Below are positions 4,033 through 39,207 of a DNA stretch of 64,000 nucleotides, one piece after another; within the stretch, counting starts at the first letter, position 1, and each line of letters begins with the position of its first letter. The stretch spans positions 1-64,000 of IMG/VR virus record IMGVR_UViG_3300017963_000188; one strand, given 5' to 3'. The notes below the pieces were generated by a model. The model saw only the letters and a program-made list of their open reading frames with translations. It was not told where the DNA came from and ran no database searches. The translations under genes and the position numbers were made by a program.

Positions 4033-4061
4033 TTTAAAAAATCGATTATCTCCGGTATAGA
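4033..4061 (+). promoter_or_regulatory. phage promoter TTTAAA-N17-TATAGA
   Basis: exact consensus upstream of the RNA ligase gene. Confidence 0.8.
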
Positions 4062-4120: not shown

Positions 4121-5242
4121 ATGAATCCATATAACATTCCATTTAATGAATTGTATCAAGGATTACTTGCTGAGGTTGAAAAGGGGTGGATTCGTAAAGT
4201 AGATGACCCTGAAGGTCCATTAGAGCTATATAACTACACAGAAGACTGTCAAGAACAACGAGTATGGAATCCCTCAACAATCGTTGCAAGGGGTCTTGTA
4301 CTTGATCCAATCAAGAAGAAGGTTGTAGCTCACCCCTTCCCAAAATTCTTCAATCTGGGGGAACCTGAGGCTGCTGAGATACACCACCCCATCAAGGTAA
4401 CAGAGAAGATGGATGGGTCTTTGGTAATAGCTTTCTGGGATGAATATCAAAATAAGTTCAGAACCGTGACCAGAGGTTCATTCACAAGTCCAGCAGCTCT
4501 ATCAGCTCAAGATATGTTACCTCAGAACCTGAACAAAGATTACACATATCTGCTTGAGTTGATTGGTCCTGATAATTGGGTTGTGGTGAAATATCCTGAT
4601 GATCGTCTCATTCTTCTCACTATCTACGATCAAATAGGTCATGAGTTGAATTGGCCTGATGTTCTTTTATGGGGTAGGAGGATGGGTGTTGATGTCGTTC
4701 AGACTCATGTTTTCGATACTGTTGGGGAGACATTGCAATATGCTCAAACTCTCCCAAATGACCGTGAAGGATTTGTAATACGTGATAGATATGGAAGTAG
4801 GGTAAAAGTAAAGGGTCCAGAGTATCTGAAGCTCCATAAATTCTTGTCTAGAATCACACCTAAGAATGTGTGGAGGTGGATGAGGCATGGTGAGGGGGTA
4901 GATCCAGAACGAATCCCTGACGAATTTTTGCCTGACTTCAAAGAACTCCAACGAATGTTTGAAGAGAAGTTTGAAGAAGTGTTGGGGCAGGTGGGTTTGT
5001 TGAAGGGAAAGGTATATCAGTTCTCTCGAAAAGAACTAGCACTGACTCTTAATGGAGGGAAATGGCCTCGTGGTTCAGAAGTTACGAGGTTTGAGAAGAA
5101 GTTTGCCTTCCACTGTTTTGATCTAGATTTCCCAGAGAAGGCTCGTACCATAGGGTCCAAACAACGTCGTAACGTGTTTGATGAGTTTGAGCCAAAAGGG
5201 AAACATCTCGATGGATTTGAACCACTCAATTCAATGATCTAA
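4121..5242 (+). CDS. T4 Rnl1-like RNA ligase
   Basis: ARGLV, PFPKFFN, TEKMDGSL (motif I, adenylated Lys), EGFVI (motif IV), RVKVKGPEY (motif V). Confidence 0.9.
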   Translation: MNPYNIPFNELYQGLLAEVEKGWIRKVDDPEGPLELYNYTEDCQEQRVWNPSTIVARGLVLDPIKKKVVAHPFPKFFNLGEPEAAEIHHPIKVTEKMDGSLVIAFWDEYQNKFRTVTRGSFTSPAALSAQDMLPQNLNKDYTYLLELIGPDNWVVVKYPDDRLILLTIYDQIGHELNWPDVLLWGRRMGVDVVQTHVFDTVGETLQYAQTLPNDREGFVIRDRYGSRVKVKGPEYLKLHKFLSRITPKNVWRWMRHGEGVDPERIPDEFLPDFKELQRMFEEKFEEVLGQVGLLKGKVYQFSRKELALTLNGGKWPRGSEVTRFEKKFAFHCFDLDFPEKARTIGSKQRRNVFDEFEPKGKHLDGFEPLNSMI

Positions 5243-5284: not shown

Positions 5285-6007
5285 ATGAGAAGAAAGTGGA
5301 CTCCTAAAGAGATAGCAGACCTTAGACTGCTTGCAGAATTAAAATCAATACAAGAATTGTCCCGATTATTTGACCGTAGCTCGGACTCTATAAGAGCACA
5401 ATGCCGATTACATAACATTAGTTACAAGAGGGTTGTGAATCGTAAAGAATGGTCTAGTAGGGAATTGGAACGACTCAAAGGTCTATTAGAGCATTATACG
5501 ATAAGTGAAGCTGCTGAACGATTGGGTCGCAACCCAAAAGCTGTTTGGGCTAAGATGAAACAGGAAGGTATAAAGCATAAGGTCACAAAGGCTAGTCCTT
5601 TCCATACCAAGGATCGGAATAGGGTATGGACCCAGGAAGATGATGATTTACTCTACCAGATGGCTGAGACAAGTTCGGTACGGAACATAGCTAAAAGGAT
5701 GGATCGAAGCCCTGGAGCTATCAGAACCAGAGCTATGGAGCTTGGTATTACATGGCATCGATACCGATGGACAATAGGGAAAATAGCTGAACTTTTAGGG
5801 GTAGGTAAGACTACTGTTGCTAAATATAGAAAAAAACTCAAACAGAAGTGGAGATATAAGAGCACTTTCAAAGAACCCACAGAAGAAGAGATACAAGCTA
5901 TAGCTCAAGCCATACTTGATAATCCTCGTTCTCAGGTCAAAGATGCAAAAAGACTCAGACAAATAGCTGAAGGAAATTGGGATGCTTGGGAGTGGAGATT
6001 AAAATAA
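5285..6007 (+). CDS. tandem Myb/SANT-like HTH repeat DNA-binding protein
   Basis: repeats WTPKE..L, WSSRE..L and WTQEDDDLL plus an HTH; paralog of 37370-38233. Confidence 0.7.
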   Translation: MRRKWTPKEIADLRLLAELKSIQELSRLFDRSSDSIRAQCRLHNISYKRVVNRKEWSSRELERLKGLLEHYTISEAAERLGRNPKAVWAKMKQEGIKHKVTKASPFHTKDRNRVWTQEDDDLLYQMAETSSVRNIAKRMDRSPGAIRTRAMELGITWHRYRWTIGKIAELLGVGKTTVAKYRKKLKQKWRYKSTFKEPTEEEIQAIAQAILDNPRSQVKDAKRLRQIAEGNWDAWEWRLK

Positions 6008-13468: not shown

Positions 13469-14494
13469 ATGATAGAAAAGATATTCACATTGGAAACTAC
13501 TCAATATTCAACAGCACCTTCAATTTATTTGGCAGGACCTACATATAGAATTATTGATGGTGCAGAACCACCTATAGGGTGGAGAAATAAAGCATCACAG
13601 ATTCTTGAGTCGTGGGAAGGAGCTGTTTATATCCCTGAATGGAGAGGTGGGGTGAAGCCAGAGGGGTGGACTTATAGCAGGCAGGTGGATTGGGAAATGC
13701 AGGCTATGGAGAATGCCACAGTAATTTTGTTTTGGATACCAAGGGAACTTCCAGTTCTCCCAGCCTTTACCACCAATATAGAGTTTGGAGAATTTCTACA
13801 GACTGGAAAGATTGTGGTGGGAGCCCCTAAGGACGCTCCAAACAATCGTTATATATTTGAACGTTGTTCTAGAAGTAATGTCCCTACCAGCCATGACCTC
13901 GAAACTTGTGTGTTGCAAGCCATCAACTTGGTCAAGAGATTACGGGGAGAGATTGATACGGTACATTTCACTGCTGATACTCATTTCAATCATAAAAGAA
14001 CTCTAGAACTATCAAGACGACCATTTTCCAGTGTTCTAGAGATGAATTCTATGATGATTTACTACTGGAACGGGGTAGTATCTAGAAATGGTACTGTGTA
14101 TCATCTTGGTGATTTTGGTGACCCTTCATATATTGAACATCTGAATGGGAAAAAGATCTATATAGTTCCTGGAAACTATGACAAACCAGAGATCCTTGAA
14201 ACTTTGACCAAAGACCCAAGGGTAGAGATTCTTGGTCCACGTAGTTCTTACCATATCGATAACAACTACTTTACCTTGATTCATGCCCCTGAAGATGGGA
14301 AAGATGTGAATATGTTCTATCTCTATGGGCATATCCATAAGCTACAAATGGTGAAAATGAATGGACTCAACGTGGGGGTAGATTGTCACAACTTCACACC
14401 AATAGATGAAAATGAGGTGATGTTCTATCGAAGTGCTGTGATGCAACATTATGATGACAACGTGTTCACGCTAGGTATGGGGATGAACACTTAA
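13469..14494 (+). CDS. nucleoside 2-deoxyribosyltransferase-like domain fused to a calcineurin-like metallophosphoesterase
   Basis: N-terminal IYLAGP..WR..QVDWE..ATVILFWIP..TTNIEFG; C-terminal ADTHFNH, HLGDF, GNYD, YGHIH, NVGVD. Confidence 0.85.
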   Translation: MIEKIFTLETTQYSTAPSIYLAGPTYRIIDGAEPPIGWRNKASQILESWEGAVYIPEWRGGVKPEGWTYSRQVDWEMQAMENATVILFWIPRELPVLPAFTTNIEFGEFLQTGKIVVGAPKDAPNNRYIFERCSRSNVPTSHDLETCVLQAINLVKRLRGEIDTVHFTADTHFNHKRTLELSRRPFSSVLEMNSMMIYYWNGVVSRNGTVYHLGDFGDPSYIEHLNGKKIYIVPGNYDKPEILETLTKDPRVEILGPRSSYHIDNNYFTLIHAPEDGKDVNMFYLYGHIHKLQMVKMNGLNVGVDCHNFTPIDENEVMFYRSAVMQHYDDNVFTLGMGMNT

Positions 14495-19004: not shown

Positions 19005-19033
19005 TTTAAAAATCTGAAAAGTTTCGGTATAGA
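19005..19033 (+). promoter_or_regulatory. phage promoter TTTAAA-N17-TATAGA
   Basis: exact consensus, then AGGAGGT and the ORF at 19052. Confidence 0.85.
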
Positions 19034-19051
19034 GTTGTAGGAGGTGACGAG

Positions 19052-19429
19052 ATGAAATTCAGAGTCGAACTCGAAGTCACTGAGCGTGGTATCCTGGCCA
19101 ATGGTCAAGTCCTGACTCATGTCCGTACCATGCACATGCCTGACCGTCGATTCTACACAGGTGGTATCACCAGCAATGACAAGCGGCTGGTCTACCGTCG
19201 TGATCTGGTCCGTAAAGAACTCAAAGAGTGCTATCAGGTCAATCTCCCCAGGGGTGCCGAGATCGGGACAAAATGGACCATCGAGGTCGAAGTCGAAAAG
19301 TTCTGGGGATGGTATCATGGTGATGCTGATGACGTGACCAGCTTCGAGGATGAAGACTACGATGCCTATAGCATCGATATGGCCGATGATGATGTCCCAG
19401 TCACCCCCAACCATTTGGTAGGAGAGTGA
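19052..19429 (+). CDS. hypothetical protein
   Basis: promoter, RBS, GC-richer codon usage. Confidence 0.75.
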   Translation: MKFRVELEVTERGILANGQVLTHVRTMHMPDRRFYTGGITSNDKRLVYRRDLVRKELKECYQVNLPRGAEIGTKWTIEVEVEKFWGWYHGDADDVTSFEDEDYDAYSIDMADDDVPVTPNHLVGE

Positions 19430-25814: not shown

Positions 25815-26855
25815 ATGAAAACTATAGAATTTGGTATCCCCCTGAATATCAGGGATGGAATGATTAGCTTGAATGACCTAGTGTCTTGTCTCGGACTCAG
25901 CCCCAAATCAAGAAGTAGTGTGAAGAAACGAATCGGTGACCCCCACCTGAGCTATGAAGTAGTAGATGGGAATCGAACCCTCATGGTAACGAAGCAAGGG
26001 GTAAAAGAATTGTCTGGTACGCTTCGTAAAGAGGAGGCTCAGACCAGAATCAAACAATTGCTGACTCTGCTGAGTGATGATGTTTATGAGCCCCCTGTCA
26101 CATCCTTGGCTGTGGTGGAAGCAGAAGTATTTGAAGCCAAGGTAATCAATCTTGATGAAGACCCAGATAGTTTCAACCCCCATGAGTTCCCTAACTCAAA
26201 TCCGATGGAAGGTCTTGATGACCTGATGGTGTATCAAAGACAGTTTCAGGGACTCCCTGTCGAGTTCAGAACCAATGGTCAGATACCGGTGCTGACCAGA
26301 GAGCAGTTGGGGGAGAAGCTGGGATATAAACACCCACGTCTATCAATAGGGAAGATCCACAGAAATATTGAAGGGGGTCTAATAGGGCATAGCTGGGAAA
26401 CCGATTTGGTTTCTGGGGACCCTCAAAAGGGAGGGGGTCGAAGAAAGACTTGGATATATGACCTGGCAGGTATCTTGAAAATATGTGCTCGGTCCAATCA
26501 ACCTCTGGCAAAAGACTTCTCTGATTTCTGTTGTGACACAATCCTGAAAATCATGACCCACCCCTCAAGAGAAGAAAAGGTCATTGACCAGTTCTGTGAT
26601 CGAATCATGGCAGTGGGGGGCAGGTTGGAGATTTATCGTAACAGAGCAATCAGAGCTGAAACGACCAGTCAGATTCAGGTACGTGAAACATCCAAGCTCA
26701 GACTGAAGGTGTCAGAACTAGAAGAAGAGAATGAAGAACTCAAGAAGATAGTGAGACACCAGGGGAGGAAGATTAATTTCTTGGAGGGGGAGGTGGAGAG
26801 ATTAGAGGACGAGCTGGATATAAGAAGTACCATTTCTGTTGTCAGGACTTCCTAG
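25815..26855 (+). CDS. Bro-N-like DNA-binding protein with C-terminal coiled coil
   Basis: VLTREQLGEKLGYKHPRLSIGKIH..YDLAGILKICARSNQPLAKDF; paralog of 38281-39207. Confidence 0.6.
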   Translation: MKTIEFGIPLNIRDGMISLNDLVSCLGLSPKSRSSVKKRIGDPHLSYEVVDGNRTLMVTKQGVKELSGTLRKEEAQTRIKQLLTLLSDDVYEPPVTSLAVVEAEVFEAKVINLDEDPDSFNPHEFPNSNPMEGLDDLMVYQRQFQGLPVEFRTNGQIPVLTREQLGEKLGYKHPRLSIGKIHRNIEGGLIGHSWETDLVSGDPQKGGGRRKTWIYDLAGILKICARSNQPLAKDFSDFCCDTILKIMTHPSREEKVIDQFCDRIMAVGGRLEIYRNRAIRAETTSQIQVRETSKLRLKVSELEEENEELKKIVRHQGRKINFLEGEVERLEDELDIRSTISVVRTS

Positions 26856-26880: not shown

Positions 26881-27106
26881 TACAAAATCCCAGAAAGTTT
26901 CAGTATAGAATAGTAGCTGGGGGTAACGGTTACACGACCTAACCCCTCCAGGAGAAGGAACGCTTCGGGGGGATCTGTCCTGGGGAATATGGGACAGGTC
27001 GGTCCTCCCCATCCCCCTAGCCTTTCGACCGGGGGTATCTGTTCTCGAAACCCCTTAGGAGCATCAAGCTCTATATTTATATACTGAGACTTTTCTGATT
27101 TTTAAA
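26881..27106. other. non-coding cassette A between convergent promoters (core on the minus strand)
   Basis: TACAAA-N17-TATAGA (+, 26881-26909), TTTAAA-N17-TATATA (-, 27106-27078); core 26956-27012. Confidence 0.75.
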
Positions 27107-27147
27107 GTATTAATTAACATTCTATATAGAAACTTTGGAGGTAAACT

Positions 27148-27474
27148 ATGTACCGATATTCCAAGAGAGCTGACTATTTAACTCAAAAACATCCTGAACT
27201 AAGAAAGGGAAACACCATGTACCGTTATAGACAAGCCCGTAGAGTTAGAGCTGCCTCCTTATTAGAGATGCAGCGTGAATACAATCGTGGATTGTCTGAC
27301 CTCGAAAATGGGTATGCTGTCATGATGAAGTTGGCAGATACCTATGCTGCTGAATCTCAATATGTGAATCACCAAGCCCTCGATACTCTCAGAGAAGTGC
27401 TGGCTGACCTCCATGACCTGGTAAATGTCAACCTGAGAACTATTCAGACTCAACTTTGGGAGGATGCAAATTAA
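27148..27474 (+). CDS. MYRY-leader protein with two tandem leaders
   Basis: MYRYSKRA at 27148 and MYRYRQARRVRA at 27217. Confidence 0.75.
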   Translation: MYRYSKRADYLTQKHPELRKGNTMYRYRQARRVRAASLLEMQREYNRGLSDLENGYAVMMKLADTYAAESQYVNHQALDTLREVLADLHDLVNVNLRTIQTQLWEDAN

Positions 27475-27607
27475 GCCATGGATACCCAAGAGCCATAAGA
27501 AAGCATCCCTAGAACGTATGAAAGGTTATGGTTCATATTCTCGTAGAAGTCGTAGAACCAGAATGGTGAGAGCTACAGTAGAATGGGGTGTAGACGAAGA
27601 GGAATGA
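27464..27607 (+). CDS. 47-aa ORF with an RRSRRTRMVRA motif (absent from the track)
   Basis: MQIKPWIPKSHKKASLERMKGYGSYSRRSRRTRMVRATVEWGVDEEE. Confidence 0.4.
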   Translation: MQIKPWIPKSHKKASLERMKGYGSYSRRSRRTRMVRATVEWGVDEEE

Positions 27608-27668
27608 AACAAAATCTATGTTTCGTCACTATTGTTAGCTAATGATGCTAACACGATAGGAGATACAC

Positions 27669-27911
27669 ATGTACCGATACCGTAAAGCCCGAAGGGTGAG
27701 AGCCATGGGTATATTGCCTGATGAGATACTTGTTCGTTTGGATCAGCTAGAGAAAGATGCCAAGACGTTACAGAAGCAATACCAAGTCTTGGCAAATGAC
27801 ATGGCAATGAACCCACAGGTTGACCCTGAAGATGTTGATGACTTTATAGATGTAGTCAATGCTGTGAACGACCTCGTATATGATATCCAGAAGTATCGGA
27901 GAGGTTACTAA
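27669..27911 (+). CDS. MYRY-leader small acidic protein
   Basis: AGGAG RBS; MYRYRKARRVRA. Confidence 0.75.
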   Translation: MYRYRKARRVRAMGILPDEILVRLDQLEKDAKTLQKQYQVLANDMAMNPQVDPEDVDDFIDVVNAVNDLVYDIQKYRRGY

Positions 27912-27981
27912 CCCCCTGCAATAATTTATTTATAAATGTTACAAAAGACAGAATTTGTAACGTTTCATTGGAGATCTGAAG

Positions 27982-28368
27982 ATGAGACTAACAGCCAAAG
28001 ATTTGAGTCCTGAGACAGTGGACCTCATCCAAACAGCTAATGGTGATCCAGAGGTGGTGAAGTTACGTAAGGAACTGACCCTCTACAAAAAGAATGATCC
28101 AGGTCTGGCTATGATGAGAAGTAAGGTCACTACTTCCATTATGAAGTTCAATGAAGATTTGGGGAGAGCTTTGGATAAGTATAAAAGATTCCCTTCAGAC
28201 TCTGTTCTTGAAAAGTTAATTGACAAGAACTGGAAAAGAGCTGGGGTGGTTGATGACTTTGAAGGGATGTTCAAGGATTACTGCTTAGGTGTTATAGCTA
28301 AGGTGAAGAGTCTCAAGTCTACAGTGTCTGGTAAACTCAGAGCCCTTGCATCACAAATCTGTAAATGA
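27982..28368 (+). CDS. hypothetical protein ending in KLRALASQI
   Basis: GGAG RBS. Confidence 0.65.
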   Translation: MRLTAKDLSPETVDLIQTANGDPEVVKLRKELTLYKKNDPGLAMMRSKVTTSIMKFNEDLGRALDKYKRFPSDSVLEKLIDKNWKRAGVVDDFEGMFKDYCLGVIAKVKSLKSTVSGKLRALASQICK

Positions 28369-28811
28369 ACTCCAGAGTAAAGCACATCATTGACACGATG
28401 GATCATTCAGATCCATTTGCCCCCAATCTGAATGAATGGCCCCTGGTGATAGTGACCTACCCCAAAGTATCCAGGCAGGTACTTATCGAGCATTTAAAAA
28501 ATGGAACTGACCTCACCCCCTTTGATAAGGTAGGGGAGTATTATGGTCTAGTGCTTGATAGTAGGAATGATGAACAGGCAACGGCTATGGAACGTAGAGC
28601 AGGGGCAGACTCTTTAGCTCAGATACAAAAACGTCTCGATAGGGGTGAGTGCAATCTTACATGTATAGCCATAGTGAACAATGCAGGTCCCTTCCTAAAG
28701 ACTGTACTCAACATCGTACTCATGCTCCAGAACATATCAATCCCAGTCAAGATGTTCAGTCATTTGCTTGAAGCAAAGTCCTGGGCTCTGAATGAAATTT
28801 ATAGAAAATAG
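28365..28811 (+). CDS. hypothetical protein, possibly STAS/SEC14-like
   Basis: EWPLVIVTYP..LVLDSR..CIAIVNN..PVKMFSHLLEAKSWA pattern. Confidence 0.4.
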   Translation: MNSRVKHIIDTMDHSDPFAPNLNEWPLVIVTYPKVSRQVLIEHLKNGTDLTPFDKVGEYYGLVLDSRNDEQATAMERRAGADSLAQIQKRLDRGECNLTCIAIVNNAGPFLKTVLNIVLMLQNISIPVKMFSHLLEAKSWALNEIYRK

Positions 28812-28814
28812 TTC

Positions 28815-29010
28815 TACAAAATCTCAGAAAGTTTCAGTATAGAATAATAGGGAGAGGGGACTTCAAAAGACCCCTGGACCCATGGGGAGGTCTGGTCTGT
28901 AGACAGTCCCTTGATAGATCTCCCCGAAGCCATGCTCCCTCAACCGGCCCCAGGTCTCGATACCCTTTTGCCTGTCATTATTATATACTGAAGAAAATCT
29001 AGATTTTAAA
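28815..29010. other. non-coding cassette B between convergent promoters
   Basis: TACAAA-N17-TATAGA (+, 28815-28843), TTTAAA-N17-TATATA (-, 29010-28982); core 28881-28935. Confidence 0.75.
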
Positions 29011-29020
29011 TAAAAAGTTC

Positions 29021-29215
29021 TACAAAATTCGAGAAAGTTTCAGTATAGAATAATAGAGGGAGGAACCGAAAAGGACCTGGGCTCATGGGGAGGTCTGTCT
29101 TAAGGGATACTCCCCTGGACAGATCCCCCCGGAGCGTTCCTACTTCGACTGGCTCCGAGTCTCAGTACCCTTTAACCAATCACTATTATATACCGAAGCC
29201 AGATCAGATTTTAAA
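29021..29215. other. non-coding cassette C between convergent promoters
   Basis: TACAAA-N17-TATAGA (+, 29021-29049), TTTAAA-N17-TATATA (-, 29215-29187); core 29085-29141. Confidence 0.75.
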
Positions 29216-29282: not shown

Positions 29283-29460
29283 CATGGCTAAGACCCACAA
29301 GGACCACAACTACTGGAACCCCAAGAAGGAGAAGAAGCCTGCCAGGAAGAGGACCAACCGTAAGGCCCGTCACCTGGCCAAGGCTGCCCTCACCGATGGT
29401 TGCTTCGATGCCCACCCCCTCACCTATAGCCCCAAGACCTCTGGCTGGGAGACCAACTAA
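29283..29460 (+). CDS. small basic protein MAKTHKD
   Basis: promoter, RBS, high GC3. Confidence 0.7.
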
Positions 29461-29461
29461 T

Positions 29462-29944
29462 ATGCCCAAGCGTAAGGAGCTGAAGGTCTATGTGCAGGGA
29501 ACGGTAACCCCCTCCAGGAAACTGGAGGTCGAGACCATGACCCGTGAGCTAGTAGCCAAGCTCTTCTCCACCCGTATGAGCAACACCCTCAGGATCACGG
29601 TCAAGCTCAGAGCATCCACTCTCAAGAAGAGTACCAACGGGGTGGCTTGCTTCAAGTCTCTCCAAGCTCATACCTCCCACAAGTCCAAGCACTACACCAT
29701 CACCATCCAACGTGACAGATGTGACAACTTCAAACGGACCCTGGCTCATGAGCTGGTACACGTCAGGCAGTTTGCTACGGGTCAACTCAGGTTCGGACCC
29801 AAGCCCTACACCAACAAGCGTGTCTGGGGGTGGTTCTGGAGGTCAGGACCAGGGGCTGCTCAGTATTATGAACAAGACTACCCCTACGTGGACCAGCCCT
29901 GGGAGATAGAGGCCAGGCAGGTCGCTCAGGGGGTGGTCTCTTAA
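29462..29944 (+). CDS. zinc metallopeptidase-like (HExxH) protein
   Basis: TLAHELVHVRQF..QPWEIEAR. Confidence 0.7.
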   Translation: MPKRKELKVYVQGTVTPSRKLEVETMTRELVAKLFSTRMSNTLRITVKLRASTLKKSTNGVACFKSLQAHTSHKSKHYTITIQRDRCDNFKRTLAHELVHVRQFATGQLRFGPKPYTNKRVWGWFWRSGPGAAQYYEQDYPYVDQPWEIEARQVAQGVVS

Positions 29945-29965
29945 CCACCCAGGGAGGTGACAGGC

Positions 29966-30157
29966 ATGGATAAGCCAGAATGCAAGCTCACAGGAACCGA
30001 TGGGAACGTGTTTGCCATCATGGGGAAGGTCACATCAGCCCTCAAGAGGGCAGGGCAGCGTGAAAAGGCCGAAGAATTCAGGACCAAGGCCATGTCGGGG
30101 GACTATGACTATGATGGAGTGCTTCAGCTCTGCTTCGACTATGTGGATGTCTGCTAG
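29966..30157 (+). CDS. small conserved phage protein
   Basis: KLTGTDGNVFAIMGKV..ALKRAG..SGDYD. Confidence 0.7.
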   Translation: MDKPECKLTGTDGNVFAIMGKVTSALKRAGQREKAEEFRTKAMSGDYDYDGVLQLCFDYVDVC

Positions 30158-38280: not shown

Positions 38281-39207
38281 TTAGACACGATTCTTAGGCT
38301 GGGAAGTCTGGTAGATGTTAGACATCATATACATGTCACGGTTCTGCTTCTTCAGACGCTCGATTTCAGCATCCTTTTCTTTGATGATCTGGTCTTTCTC
38401 TTTTGATTCCTTACCCATCTCGTAGACTTGATTCAGAACAGCAGCCATATCACAACCCTGGCTTTTCTCTGACATTTCAGCTTTGACCAGACCAACCTGG
38501 ATCTCGACCATTGCCTGGGTCAGCCAACGACGGAACATTGGAGCCCTCTTCATGGTGGAAGTGCTGCAAATTTCAATGGCACCGACCAGGTTGAATCCGA
38601 CCACGTTACGTTCTTTACCATCCTTTGTGATGGTAGGGACCAGACAACTGTAACCTTCCAGTTTCTGACGAGTCACGATATTTGAAATACTCCGCTTCGG
38701 GTCTTTGTATCCCAACGCTTTCCCGAGCTGTTCACGAGTCACGATGGGATTTTGATTCTCAGCATACATACAGATGCTGTGATTGCCATACATCTTGGTG
38801 CCTGCCAGAGAATATCCGTTGGTAGGGACCAGATCGGTAACCACTTCTGCCTCAACAACCTCAGGCTCAACAACCTCAGGCTCAACAACCTCAGGCTCAA
38901 CAACCTCAGGTTTGGGCATAGGTTCGGGTTTGGATTCAGGTTTGGGCTCAGGTTTGGACAGATAGTTCTCCTCGAACACCATCATATCATCAGCGATGGA
39001 TTCGGTTTTGTGAGCCAGCTTCTTTCCGAACTTATCCACCATCTCACAGACCCCTTCCATGGACACAACCCTCTCCCCTGCATCTTTCCAGACACATTCA
39101 GGAGAGAGCTTCTGAGCTACTGTGGTCGGTGAATAGGTGGAACCGATAGCTTTGATGAGATTCTTCAGGTTGACTACCACGAATCCTCTTGAGACTTGAA
39201 ATTTCAT
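38281..39207 (-). CDS. Bro-N-like DNA-binding protein with a PEVVE repeat linker
   Basis: IVTREQLGKALGYKDPKRSISNI..FNLVGAIEICSTS..APMFRRWL. Confidence 0.6.
   Translation of the reverse strand: MKFQVSRGFVVVNLKNLIKAIGSTYSPTTVAQKLSPECVWKDAGERVVSMEGVCEMVDKFGKKLAHKTESIADDMMVFEENYLSKPEPKPESKPEPMPKPEVVEPEVVEPEVVEPEVVEAEVVTDLVPTNGYSLAGTKMYGNHSICMYAENQNPIVTREQLGKALGYKDPKRSISNIVTRQKLEGYSCLVPTITKDGKERNVVGFNLVGAIEICSTSTMKRAPMFRRWLTQAMVEIQVGLVKAEMSEKSQGCDMAAVLNQVYEMGKESKEKDQIIKEKDAEIERLKKQNRDMYMMSNIYQTSQPKNRV
38851..38910. repeat. 15-bp exact tandem repeat x4 (in-frame PEVVE)
   Basis: ctcaacaacctcagg x4. Confidence 0.9.

What the first reader, a model, noticed from the sequence alone, without database searches (positions are those of the whole stretch)
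26881..29215. Three non-coding cassettes, each transcribed from both ends, sharing a structured core
Seen: A (26881-27106), B (28815-29010) and C (29021-29215) each have a TACAAA-N17-TATAGA promoter on the left and a convergent TTTAAA-N17-TATATA promoter on the right. Each pair encloses about 130-165 GC-rich nt with no RBS-led conserved ORF. Cores: A reverse complement vs C are 45/57 identical without gaps (ATGGGGAGG...GGACAGATCCCCCCG(A/G)AGCGTTCCT). B and C keep a GGGGAGGUCUG/(U/C)AGAUC(U/C)CCCC stem with G-U pairs, and C adds GCUC/GAGC and AGGAAC/GUUCCU outer helices. Inference: a new phage ncRNA family with a built-in antisense partner (a decoy or dsRNA system), or transcription-activated replication origins of the R-loop type.
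Basis: partly seen in the sequence, partly recalled or inferred. Interest (0 to 1): 0.82.

Follow-up and report, generated by a model that had tools for sequence, protein, structure and literature searches.

The report
Conserved promoter-linked RNA element, huge phages
The three cassettes are real and non-coding, and they belong to a previously undescribed structured-RNA element found just after phage promoters in at least six huge-phage contigs, often as two copies facing each other; what it does is still unknown.

Summary
Three GC-rich non-coding cores at 26.9-29.2 kb are each bounded by inward-facing copies of this 358-kb phage's own promoter motif. That motif also sits in front of about 10 protein genes in the window.

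The interpretation needs revision. The conserved part is a ~77-nt "unit" that starts 5-9 nt after the promoter's -10 box.

Pattern scans and a covariance model found 10 more units in five other IMG/VR contigs, four of them 286-452 kb, with 54-59% GC. There they again follow those phages' own promoters.

Three helices are supported: 91.7% of cells pair, against 32-62% for slid controls. One hairpin changes on both sides in 6-7 of 13 sequences, and one G-U pair is conserved. No frame is open across members, and Rfam has no match.

In three phages the units occur as tail-to-tail convergent pairs sharing a central hairpin. In the window one half of each cassette is intact. The other half is truncated in B and C and unrecognisable in A, but keeps its promoter.

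Function is not shown. My best reading is a small structured RNA gene whose partner gives a partial antisense. A transcription-primed origin and a cis leader remain possible.

The parts
26881..26909 (+). Cassette A, left promoter (TACAAA-N17-TATAGA). It drives the intact unit of A.
   Evidence: Exact motif. Weight matrix trained on gene promoters scores it 37.6 bits.
26905..26982 (+). Cassette A, intact 77-nt unit (G-rich strand): two nested helices, a third hairpin, and a GGGGGGATCTGTCC tail.
   Evidence: Covariance model R2 scores it 58.5 bits, E about 1e-17.
26967..27010 (.). Cassette A, central GC-rich hairpin formed by the unit's tail and its downstream complement.
   Evidence: Read from the sequence. 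Present in the predicted folds.
27011..27077 (-). Cassette A, diverged opposite half. It is no longer recognisable as a unit.
   Evidence: R2 gives only 3.9 bits here. It contains an A-specific insertion with a GAAA-loop hairpin.
27078..27106 (-). Cassette A, right promoter (TTTAAA-N17-TATATA). Its palindromic -35 hexamer is shared with a rightward promoter-like site in front of gene 27148.
   Evidence: 37.8 bits.
28815..28843 (+). Cassette B, left promoter. It drives the truncated half.
   Evidence: 33.8 bits.
28842..28899 (+). Cassette B, truncated inverted unit. It keeps the promoter-proximal start and the GGGAGGTCTG tail.
   Evidence: R2 9.7 bits, E 0.04 within 2.7 kb, filters off.
28910..28986 (-). 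Cassette B, intact unit.
   Evidence: R2 57.3 bits.
28982..29010 (-). Cassette B, right promoter. It drives the intact unit of B.
   Evidence: 24.2 bits.
29021..29049 (+). Cassette C, left promoter. It drives the truncated half.
   Evidence: 33.4 bits.
29048..29102 (+). Cassette C, truncated inverted unit.
   Evidence: R2 15.3 bits, E 7e-4 within 2.7 kb. Also seen with model R1.
29115..29191 (-). Cassette C, intact unit. It is the best-conserved copy in the window.
   Evidence: R2 76.6 bits, E about 1e-21.
29187..29215 (-). Cassette C, right promoter. It drives the intact unit of C and lies back to back with the promoter of gene 29285.
   Evidence: 25.6 bits.

Best explanation
Each cassette is a tail-to-tail (convergent) pair of copies of one small non-coding RNA gene.

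The gene is a phage promoter followed 5-9 nt later by a ~77-nt G-rich 'unit'. The unit folds into two nested helices, with the inner hairpin carrying an ACAGR-type loop in the GC-rich relatives. It then forms a second hairpin, CGGAG-loop-CUUCG, and ends in a GGGGAGAUCUGUCC tail. That tail pairs with sequence just downstream to form a GC-rich hairpin.

In the window the intact copy is read from the left promoter in A and from the right promoters in B and C. The opposite half is truncated in B and C and unrecognisable in A, but keeps its promoter. The two transcripts would therefore overlap and be complementary across the shared central hairpin.

Shown: the promoters belong to the phage's promoter class; the unit is conserved in six phage contigs; its helices covary; it is not coding.

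Inferred: the RNA itself is the product. Its invariant loops and conserved G-U pair would be read by a conserved phage or host factor. The shared hairpin would end or stabilise both transcripts. The opposing promoter would add antisense control or a double-stranded segment.
For: Promoters:
- Six sites fit a matrix trained only on gene promoters, at 24-38 bits against at most 8.7 in shuffles.
- The spacers of the right-hand promoters have diverged while the -35, TCRG and -10 positions are kept.

Homologs:
- Pattern scans found the motif in intergenic DNA of five other IMG/VR contigs, four of them 286-452 kb.
- Model R2 finds 13 units at 57-82 bits.

Structure:
- 91.7% of cells pair, against 32-62% when partners are slid.
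- The covariation score is 0.471, against 0.208 for shuffles (0 of 500 reach it).
- Three pairs of the inner hairpin change on both sides in 6-7 of 13 sequences.
- One G-U pair is kept in 9 of 13 sequences.
- The complementary strand pairs in only 82.7% of cells, and never better in any member.

Position:
- In every phage the unit begins right after a CGTAT-type -10 box of a promoter class that also precedes protein genes.

Pairs:
- Tail-to-tail pairs with 10-14 nt between units occur in L094, in L032 (twice) and in window B and C.
- In L032 the pair lies between the 3' ends of two convergent genes. In L094 it lies between stem-loop inverted repeats. So it need not be a leader.

Non-coding:
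- Stops occur in every frame in 4-11 of 13 members.
- There is no Rfam match.
Against: - No transcript data exist.
- No intrinsic terminator with a U-tract follows the units, so discrete RNA ends are assumed, not seen.
- Whole-core folding energies are not exceptional.
- In cassette C the second hairpin pairs better on the other strand.
- Solo units in L031 and L092 sit directly upstream of a ribosome-binding site and start codon. That looks like a cis leader rather than a free RNA.
- The alignment used for the pair counts was fitted to the model, which favours the structure.
- No partner protein or target has been identified.
Confidence: 0.45

Rival explanations
1. Transcription-primed bidirectional replication origins. 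Each inward promoter makes a G-rich transcript that stays hybridised as an R-loop, or exposes a folded single strand that acts as a priming signal. The two primers cross in the centre and replication leaves in both directions.
For: - Both transcripts are G-rich in their first half and C-rich in the second (G/C of 74/45, then 42/81, summed over the three cassettes). Units are 29-46% G.
- The arrangement is two-fold symmetric and independent of the orientation of neighbouring genes.
- In L094 the pair lies next to a tyrosine recombinase gene.
- From established knowledge, the geometry matches that of RSF1010 oriV, which has ssiA and ssiB on opposite arms of a palindrome, and of T4 promoter-dependent origins.
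Against: - Several copies lie within 2-6 kb in three phages, which is odd for origins.
- The conserved G-U pair and the 17 wobble cells suit RNA better than DNA hairpins.
- Solo units feed straight into a gene start.
- No replication genes are nearby.
- Cumulative GC skew shows no turn at 27-29 kb.
Confidence: 0.17
2. A cis-acting leader. The unit modifies the polymerase that made it or the downstream message, by attenuation or antitermination in the manner of HK022 put, or as an RNase III processing and stability site in the manner of T7. It would control the operon that follows.
For: - The position is always promoter-proximal.
- The 3' strand of the second hairpin is also part of the longer central stem, so two folds compete, as in switch-type leaders.
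- A co-directional gene follows L031, L092, one L081 unit and window A.
- Long rod-like hairpins form in L032 and L094 (z -4.4 in L032).
Against: - Intact units B and C point into the 3' end of a convergent gene and into each other.
- Both units of the L032 pair and one of the L094 pair face the 3' ends of convergent genes.
- The L094 pair is bracketed by stem-loops.
- A is inverted relative to B and C although all flanking genes are on the + strand.
Confidence: 0.18
3. One reading: the purpose is the double-stranded RNA made by convergent transcription, acting as a decoy, a nuclease sink or a trigger. The sequence would matter only as filler.
For: - Convergent promoters are kept in three phages.
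- Inversion of A would be neutral for such a product.
- The L094 element is a near-perfect palindrome, so either transcript is self-complementary.
Against: - Filler would not keep about 30 nt of sequence between phages of 41% and 59% GC, nor show strand-specific wobble pairs.
- Five of the 13 units are solo, with no opposing unit found.
- In the window one half has decayed, which a symmetric duplex product would not predict.
Confidence: 0.1
4. Recombination modules with no function of their own: repeated promoter-plus-hairpin cassettes that persist because they shuffle small genes, like PeSLs of T4-type phages.
For: - They lie among small genes without known relatives in every phage.
- Inverted copies A and B/C flank a 1.8-kb block of five small genes, and A's core has flipped between its promoters.
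Against: Sequence and structure are kept across unrelated flanks. No protein similarity links the window to the other loci at 1e-4. Compensatory changes are present. Together these point to selection on the element itself.
Confidence: 0.08

Closest known systems
PeSL mobile regulatory cassettes of T4-type phages (PMC2839356, PMC4122927)
   Same: Both are short repeated units that combine a promoter with a stem-loop. Both are scattered among small variable genes, and both are likely substrates for recombination.
   Different: A PeSL is a terminator stem-loop followed by an outward early promoter. Here the promoter comes first and points into a 77-nt conserved folded unit. That unit is kept across phages with unrelated flanks, and the units form convergent pairs.
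Promoter-proximal cis RNAs such as HK022 putL/putR (from memory, not tested)
   Same: Both are two-hairpin RNAs of about 70-80 nt lying just after phage promoters. Both occur in several copies per genome, with structure kept by compensatory change.
   Different: Put elements lead operons. Here many units face other units or the 3' ends of genes. No sequence relationship was tested, and no effect on termination is known.
Convergent sense/antisense loci (P22 Pant/Psar, coliphage 186 pR/pL, pAD1 par; from memory)
   Same: Both have face-to-face promoters 60-220 nt apart that produce overlapping complementary RNAs.
   Different: Those promoters each serve a gene or a toxin peptide. Here both promoters serve copies of the same non-coding unit, and no peptide is encoded.
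RSF1010 oriV ssiA/ssiB palindrome and T4 promoter-dependent origins (from memory)
   Same: Both show two-fold symmetry with strand-specific folded signals on opposite arms, and transcription into the element.
   Different: No iterons, AT-rich unwinding element or replication genes are nearby. Several copies lie close together, and the wobble pairs are RNA-like.
Rfam IMES-5 (RF02995)
   Same: It gives a weak full-length alignment to cassette C, and both come from marine metagenomes.
   Different: The score is 24.3 bits against a gathering score of 96.1. There is no hit for A, B or any relative.

Membership tests
Rfam IMES-5 (RF02995) or any other Rfam 15 family | Score at or above the family's gathering threshold | tested here: not met
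   C scores 24.3 bits against 96.1. A and B have no IMES-5 hit. Four loci with relatives have no hit at E up to 1.
Bipartite sigma-type phage promoter class of this genome | -35 hexamer, 17-nt spacer, TCRG plus TATAKA, at the same layout as in front of protein genes | tested here: met
   All six sites score 24-38 bits with a matrix trained on nine gene-associated sites, against at most 8.7 bits in shuffles. Promoter activity itself was not tested.
Structured non-coding RNA family | Homologs in other genomes with compensatory base changes and no conserved reading frame | tested here: met
   13 units in six contigs. 91.7% of cells pair, covariation is 0.471 against 0.208 for shuffles, and 24 cells change on both sides. 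Stops occur in every frame.
Structured non-coding RNA family | Evidence of transcription and defined RNA ends | not testable with these tools
   No RNA run was listed.
PeSL (promoter-early stem-loop) cassettes | Stem-loop terminator immediately upstream of an outward-facing early promoter | tested here: not met
   The promoters precede the folded segment and face into it. No terminator with a U-tract was found, except one weak site in A.
Type I toxin-antitoxin (convergent toxin mRNA and antisense RNA) | Small conserved, usually hydrophobic, peptide ORF with a ribosome-binding site | tested here: not met
   No shared ORF among A, B and C or among the 13 units.
tRNA or tmRNA | Cloverleaf recognised by ARAGORN | tested here: not met
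   No genes were found in the window or in six related loci.
Transcription-primed or ssi-type replication origin | Replication initiates at the element; RNA:DNA hybrid or primase recognition | not testable with these tools
   Only indirect data are available: G-rich first halves, no skew turn, and no replication genes nearby.

The most novel reading that the evidence does not exclude
Huge phages carry a dedicated, self-contained genetic module: two copies of a structured RNA gene placed tail to tail under convergent phage promoters. Each transcript would be a long self-complementary rod and also the perfect antisense of its partner. The module would act either as a new kind of phage riboregulator or decoy, or as a transcription-primed bidirectional origin.
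Probability: 0.25. Interest if true: 0.85.

Novelty: new variant of a known kind. Interest (0 to 1): 0.68.

Why it matters
Very little is known about non-coding RNAs of huge phages. Here about 77 nt of sequence and structure are kept between phages that differ by nearly 20 points in GC content. Their flanking genes also share no detectable similarity. Something conserved therefore reads this element.

The promoter link gives a predicted 5' end, and the covariance model gives a way to find more copies.

The work also links promoter motifs across several uncultivated huge phages. That points to a shared transcription apparatus. In two of the other phages, some messages from these promoters appear to have little or no leader.

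If the convergent pairs prove functional as pairs, they would be a natural counterpart of the convergent-promoter design used in the laboratory to make double-stranded RNA.

Tried and rejected
**Searches that found no relatives or nothing useful**
- DNA search of the 4-kb region against GenBank phages: no match.
- Short-block searches gave only chance hits. The Streptomyces phage TunaTartare hit is an ordinary stem-loop in a 73-nt spacer.
- The first two-block core pattern found only the source contig in viral contigs. In metagenome and genome collections it found only chance hits in GC-rich coding DNA.
- The promoter patterns found only the source contig.
- Protein-based searches for relatives:
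  - The genes flanking A and B have no homologs at all.
  - The SprT-like gene has a 74%-identical relative on a 905-bp contig with too little flank.
  - A 47%-identical relative (L019) has no unit.
- Three independent assemblies of the phage are identical over 8.4 kb, so there is no population variation to use.
- RNA runs: none was listed.

**Readings considered and rejected**
- Coding or pseudogene readings.
- tRNA-like.
- IMES-5 membership.
- A MITE with target-site duplication: no duplication is visible at the cassette ends.

**Why the three window copies alone were not enough**
- The consensus fold of the three copies was uninformative, with structure conservation index 0.36-0.65. This is why homologs were needed.

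**Left as resemblances only**
- The T7 class II stop signal and CsrA-binding GGA motifs were considered only from memory. I left them as unscored resemblances.
Full report
**1. What is in the window**

The window is the first 64 kb of a 358,038-bp IMG/VR contig, and window and contig coordinates coincide.

- Left ends carry TACAAA-N17-TATAGA on the + strand.
- Right ends carry TTTAAA-N17-TATATA on the - strand.
- The enclosed 137-168 nt are among the most GC-rich spots in the window, at 0.60-0.64 against a mean of 0.41.
- The only comparable stretch is the gene block just downstream, at 29283-30140.

**2. The flanks are the phage's own promoters**

The same long motif recurs in front of protein genes at 4033, 6021, 19005, 29238, 39254, 52488, 55021 and 63626. 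It consists of -35 TTTAAA, a 17-nt spacer ending in TCRG, then TATAKA. There it is usually followed by four bases, TAGGAGGT and a start codon.

I trained a weight matrix on nine such gene-associated sites only. It scores the six cassette sites at 24-38 bits, while shuffled windows never exceed 8.7 bits. Only 16 sites in 64 kb pass 18 bits.

The three right-hand sites differ in the middle of the spacer but keep every consensus position. That pattern fits selection on promoter function. Activity itself is not shown.

**3. Paralogy, orientation and coding**

- B and C are tandem direct copies.
- The core of A is their reverse complement (60 nt at 78%; alignment score 56 against at most 31 for shuffles).
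- The two promoter flavours nevertheless keep their left and right places. The core of A has therefore flipped between its inverted promoter repeats.
- No further copy exists in the window.
- No ORF is shared.
- ARAGORN and Rfam find nothing. The one weak hit is IMES-5 at 24 bits against a threshold of 96, for C only.
- The three copies alone give no convincing consensus fold.

**4. Relatives**

Close relatives are absent, as the following results show.

- The flanking proteins are orphans.
- Three assemblies of the phage are identical.
- The first, strict core pattern found only chance hits elsewhere.

Relaxing the pattern to the best-conserved arm, GAYAGATCYCCCCGRAGC, and then to CCCCGRAGC-N4-5-CTACTYCG, changed the picture. 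It found intergenic matches in five other IMG/VR contigs with 54-59% GC:

| Loci | Contig size |
|---|---|
| L031 and L092 | 427 kb |
| L032 | 452 kb |
| L094 | 286 kb |
| L097 | 393 kb |
| L081 | 17 kb |

A first covariance model then found three further copies, two in L032 and one in L081.

**5. The conserved unit and its strand**

The alignable part runs from a promoter to the centre of the cassette. In the relatives its G-rich strand starts with GAAGCGGACGG or a near variant. This lies 5-9 nt after a CGTAT- or CGTAC-type box.

That box belongs to each phage's own promoter class, which also precedes protein genes:

- L032: CTTAAC-N18-CCGTATCTA, then five bases and ATG.
- L094: TTGAATCC-N12-GTGTTCC, then about eight bases and ATG.
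- L081: the same box lies about 30 nt before a ribosome-binding site.

These classes resemble the window's TTTAAA-N17-TCRGTATAGA.

Model R2 covers 77 positions and 12 pairs. It scores 13 units at 57-82 bits. The window units are A 26905-26982 (+), B 28986-28910 (-) and C 29191-29115 (-).

On the model-fitted alignment:

- 91.7% of cells pair, against 32-62% when partners are slid by one to three columns.
- The covariation score is 0.471, against 0.208 for shuffles (0 of 500 reach it).
- Three pairs of the inner hairpin change on both sides in 6-7 sequences.
- One G-U pair in the second hairpin is kept in 9 of 13 sequences.

The complementary strand would pair in 82.7% of cells, and never better in any single member.

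Two caveats apply. The alignment was fitted to the model. In cassette C the second hairpin is better on the other strand.

Every reading frame on both strands has stops in 4-11 of 13 members. Rfam has no match for the relatives.

**6. The tail hairpin and the pairs**

In 11 of 13 units the tail GGGGAGAUCUGUCC pairs with sequence just downstream. Where the tail differs, the partner arm is complementary to the changed tail (L092, L094, second L032 copy; read).

In L094 and L032 the downstream arm is a second full unit on the other strand with its own promoter. This makes a tail-to-tail pair with 11-14 nt between model ends.

- L094 is nearly a perfect palindrome. It is bracketed by stem-loop inverted repeats and lies next to a tyrosine recombinase gene.
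- The L032 pair lies between the 3' ends of two convergent genes.

In the window, the left halves of C and B are recognised as truncated units, at 15.3 and 9.7 bits. The right half of A is no longer recognised. The convergent promoters are thus explained: each cassette descends from a pair, one member of which has decayed while keeping its promoter.

This also explains why both transcripts would be G-rich in their first half.

Solo units also exist. In L031 and L092 they lie about 90-130 nt upstream of the start of paralogous 133-residue proteins. In L097 a unit lies after a homolog of that protein.

**7. How it most likely works**

Shown:

- promoter-class membership;
- conservation of sequence and structure;
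- the non-coding nature;
- the fixed promoter-to-unit distance;
- the paired architecture in three phages.

Inferred:

- The unit RNA is the product.
- Its invariant loops and G-U pair are read by a conserved factor.
- The shared hairpin ends or stabilises the transcripts.
- The opposing promoter supplies partial antisense.

I give this reading 0.45. The rivals are:

| Rival | Confidence | Main point for | Main point against |
|---|---|---|---|
| Cis leader or attenuator | 0.18 | Favoured by the solo units and by competing folds | Orientation of B, C and of the L032 and L094 pairs |
| Transcription-primed origin | 0.17 | Symmetry and G-rich transcripts | Clustered copies, RNA-type wobble pairs, no replication genes |
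| Pure double-stranded RNA product | 0.10 | Convergent promoters kept in three phages | Sequence conservation and strand-specific wobble pairs |
| Passive recombination cassette | 0.08 | Setting among small variable genes | Selection on the element itself |

**8. Comparison and novelty**

The nearest described things are PeSL cassettes (PMC2839356, PMC4122927) and promoter-proximal RNAs such as put. The layout here differs in three ways: the promoter points into the conserved unit, the units form convergent pairs, and the element is conserved across phages. It is not in Rfam.

I rate it a new variant of a known kind, a phage-encoded structured RNA element. It is of real interest because it is conserved across very different huge phages and now has a testable model.

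Noticed in passing
window 4033, 6021, 19005, 29238 (+); 32829, 39254, 52488, 55021, 63626 (-): A long conserved promoter motif (TTTAAA-N17-TCRG-TATAKA) is followed in most cases by four bases and TAGGAGGT. The messages would therefore start at or within a few bases of the ribosome-binding site. Related motifs in two other huge phages (L032, L094) sit 5-10 nt before ATG, which implies leaderless or near-leaderless messages.
   Followed up: partly
window 27148-27474, 27464-27607, 27669-27911 (+): Three small genes between cassettes A and B share an arginine-rich motif of the type MYRYRKARRVRA. It occurs twice in the first gene and is also visible as DNA repeats. It resembles the arginine-rich RNA-binding peptides of phage N proteins (from memory). 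These proteins are possible partners of the RNA.
   Followed up: no
window 29283-30140 (+): A block of three genes has 57-64% GC in a 41% GC genome, directly downstream of cassette C. The genes encode a 58-residue lysine/arginine-rich protein, a 160-residue SprT-like HExxH protein (weak Pfam hit, phrog_10499) and a 66-residue protein.
   Followed up: partly
window 19005-19060 (+) and 39254-39200 (-): Two nearly identical promoter-plus-gene-start segments occur here (MKFR... and MKFQ...). The second gene (38281-39207) and the gene upstream of cassette A (25815-26855) both carry a Bro-N domain.
   Followed up: no
L031:4092-4493 (-), L092:171-566 (-), L097:1320-1694 (+): A 124-133-residue protein family of unknown function (53-73% identity between copies) lies next to the unit in two different huge phages. 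It is downstream of the unit in one phage and upstream in the other.
   Followed up: partly
L094:4588-5424 (+) and 5526-5717: A 278-residue tyrosine recombinase gene ends about 100 nt before the near-perfect palindromic unit pair. The pair is bracketed by stem-loop inverted repeats on both sides.
   Followed up: partly
L097: about 1950-2000 (locus + strand coordinates, approximate): A sequence with a tRNA-like T-arm (GGGGTTCGAATCCCC) lies about 150 nt from the unit. ARAGORN does not call it as a tRNA.
   Followed up: no
L018:1-90: A 905-bp ENA contig encodes a 74%-identical SprT-like protein behind a similar promoter and ribosome-binding site (…TATATGGTAGTAGGAGGT…). A related phage therefore exists but is poorly assembled.
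   Followed up: no
window 4121-5242 and 13469-14494 (+): The window encodes a T4 Rnl1-type RNA ligase, whose best tblastn matches are about 30%-identical ligases of 130-kb Streptomyces phages and of Bacillus phages. It also encodes a nucleoside 2-deoxyribosyltransferase-like domain fused to a phosphoesterase.
   Followed up: no
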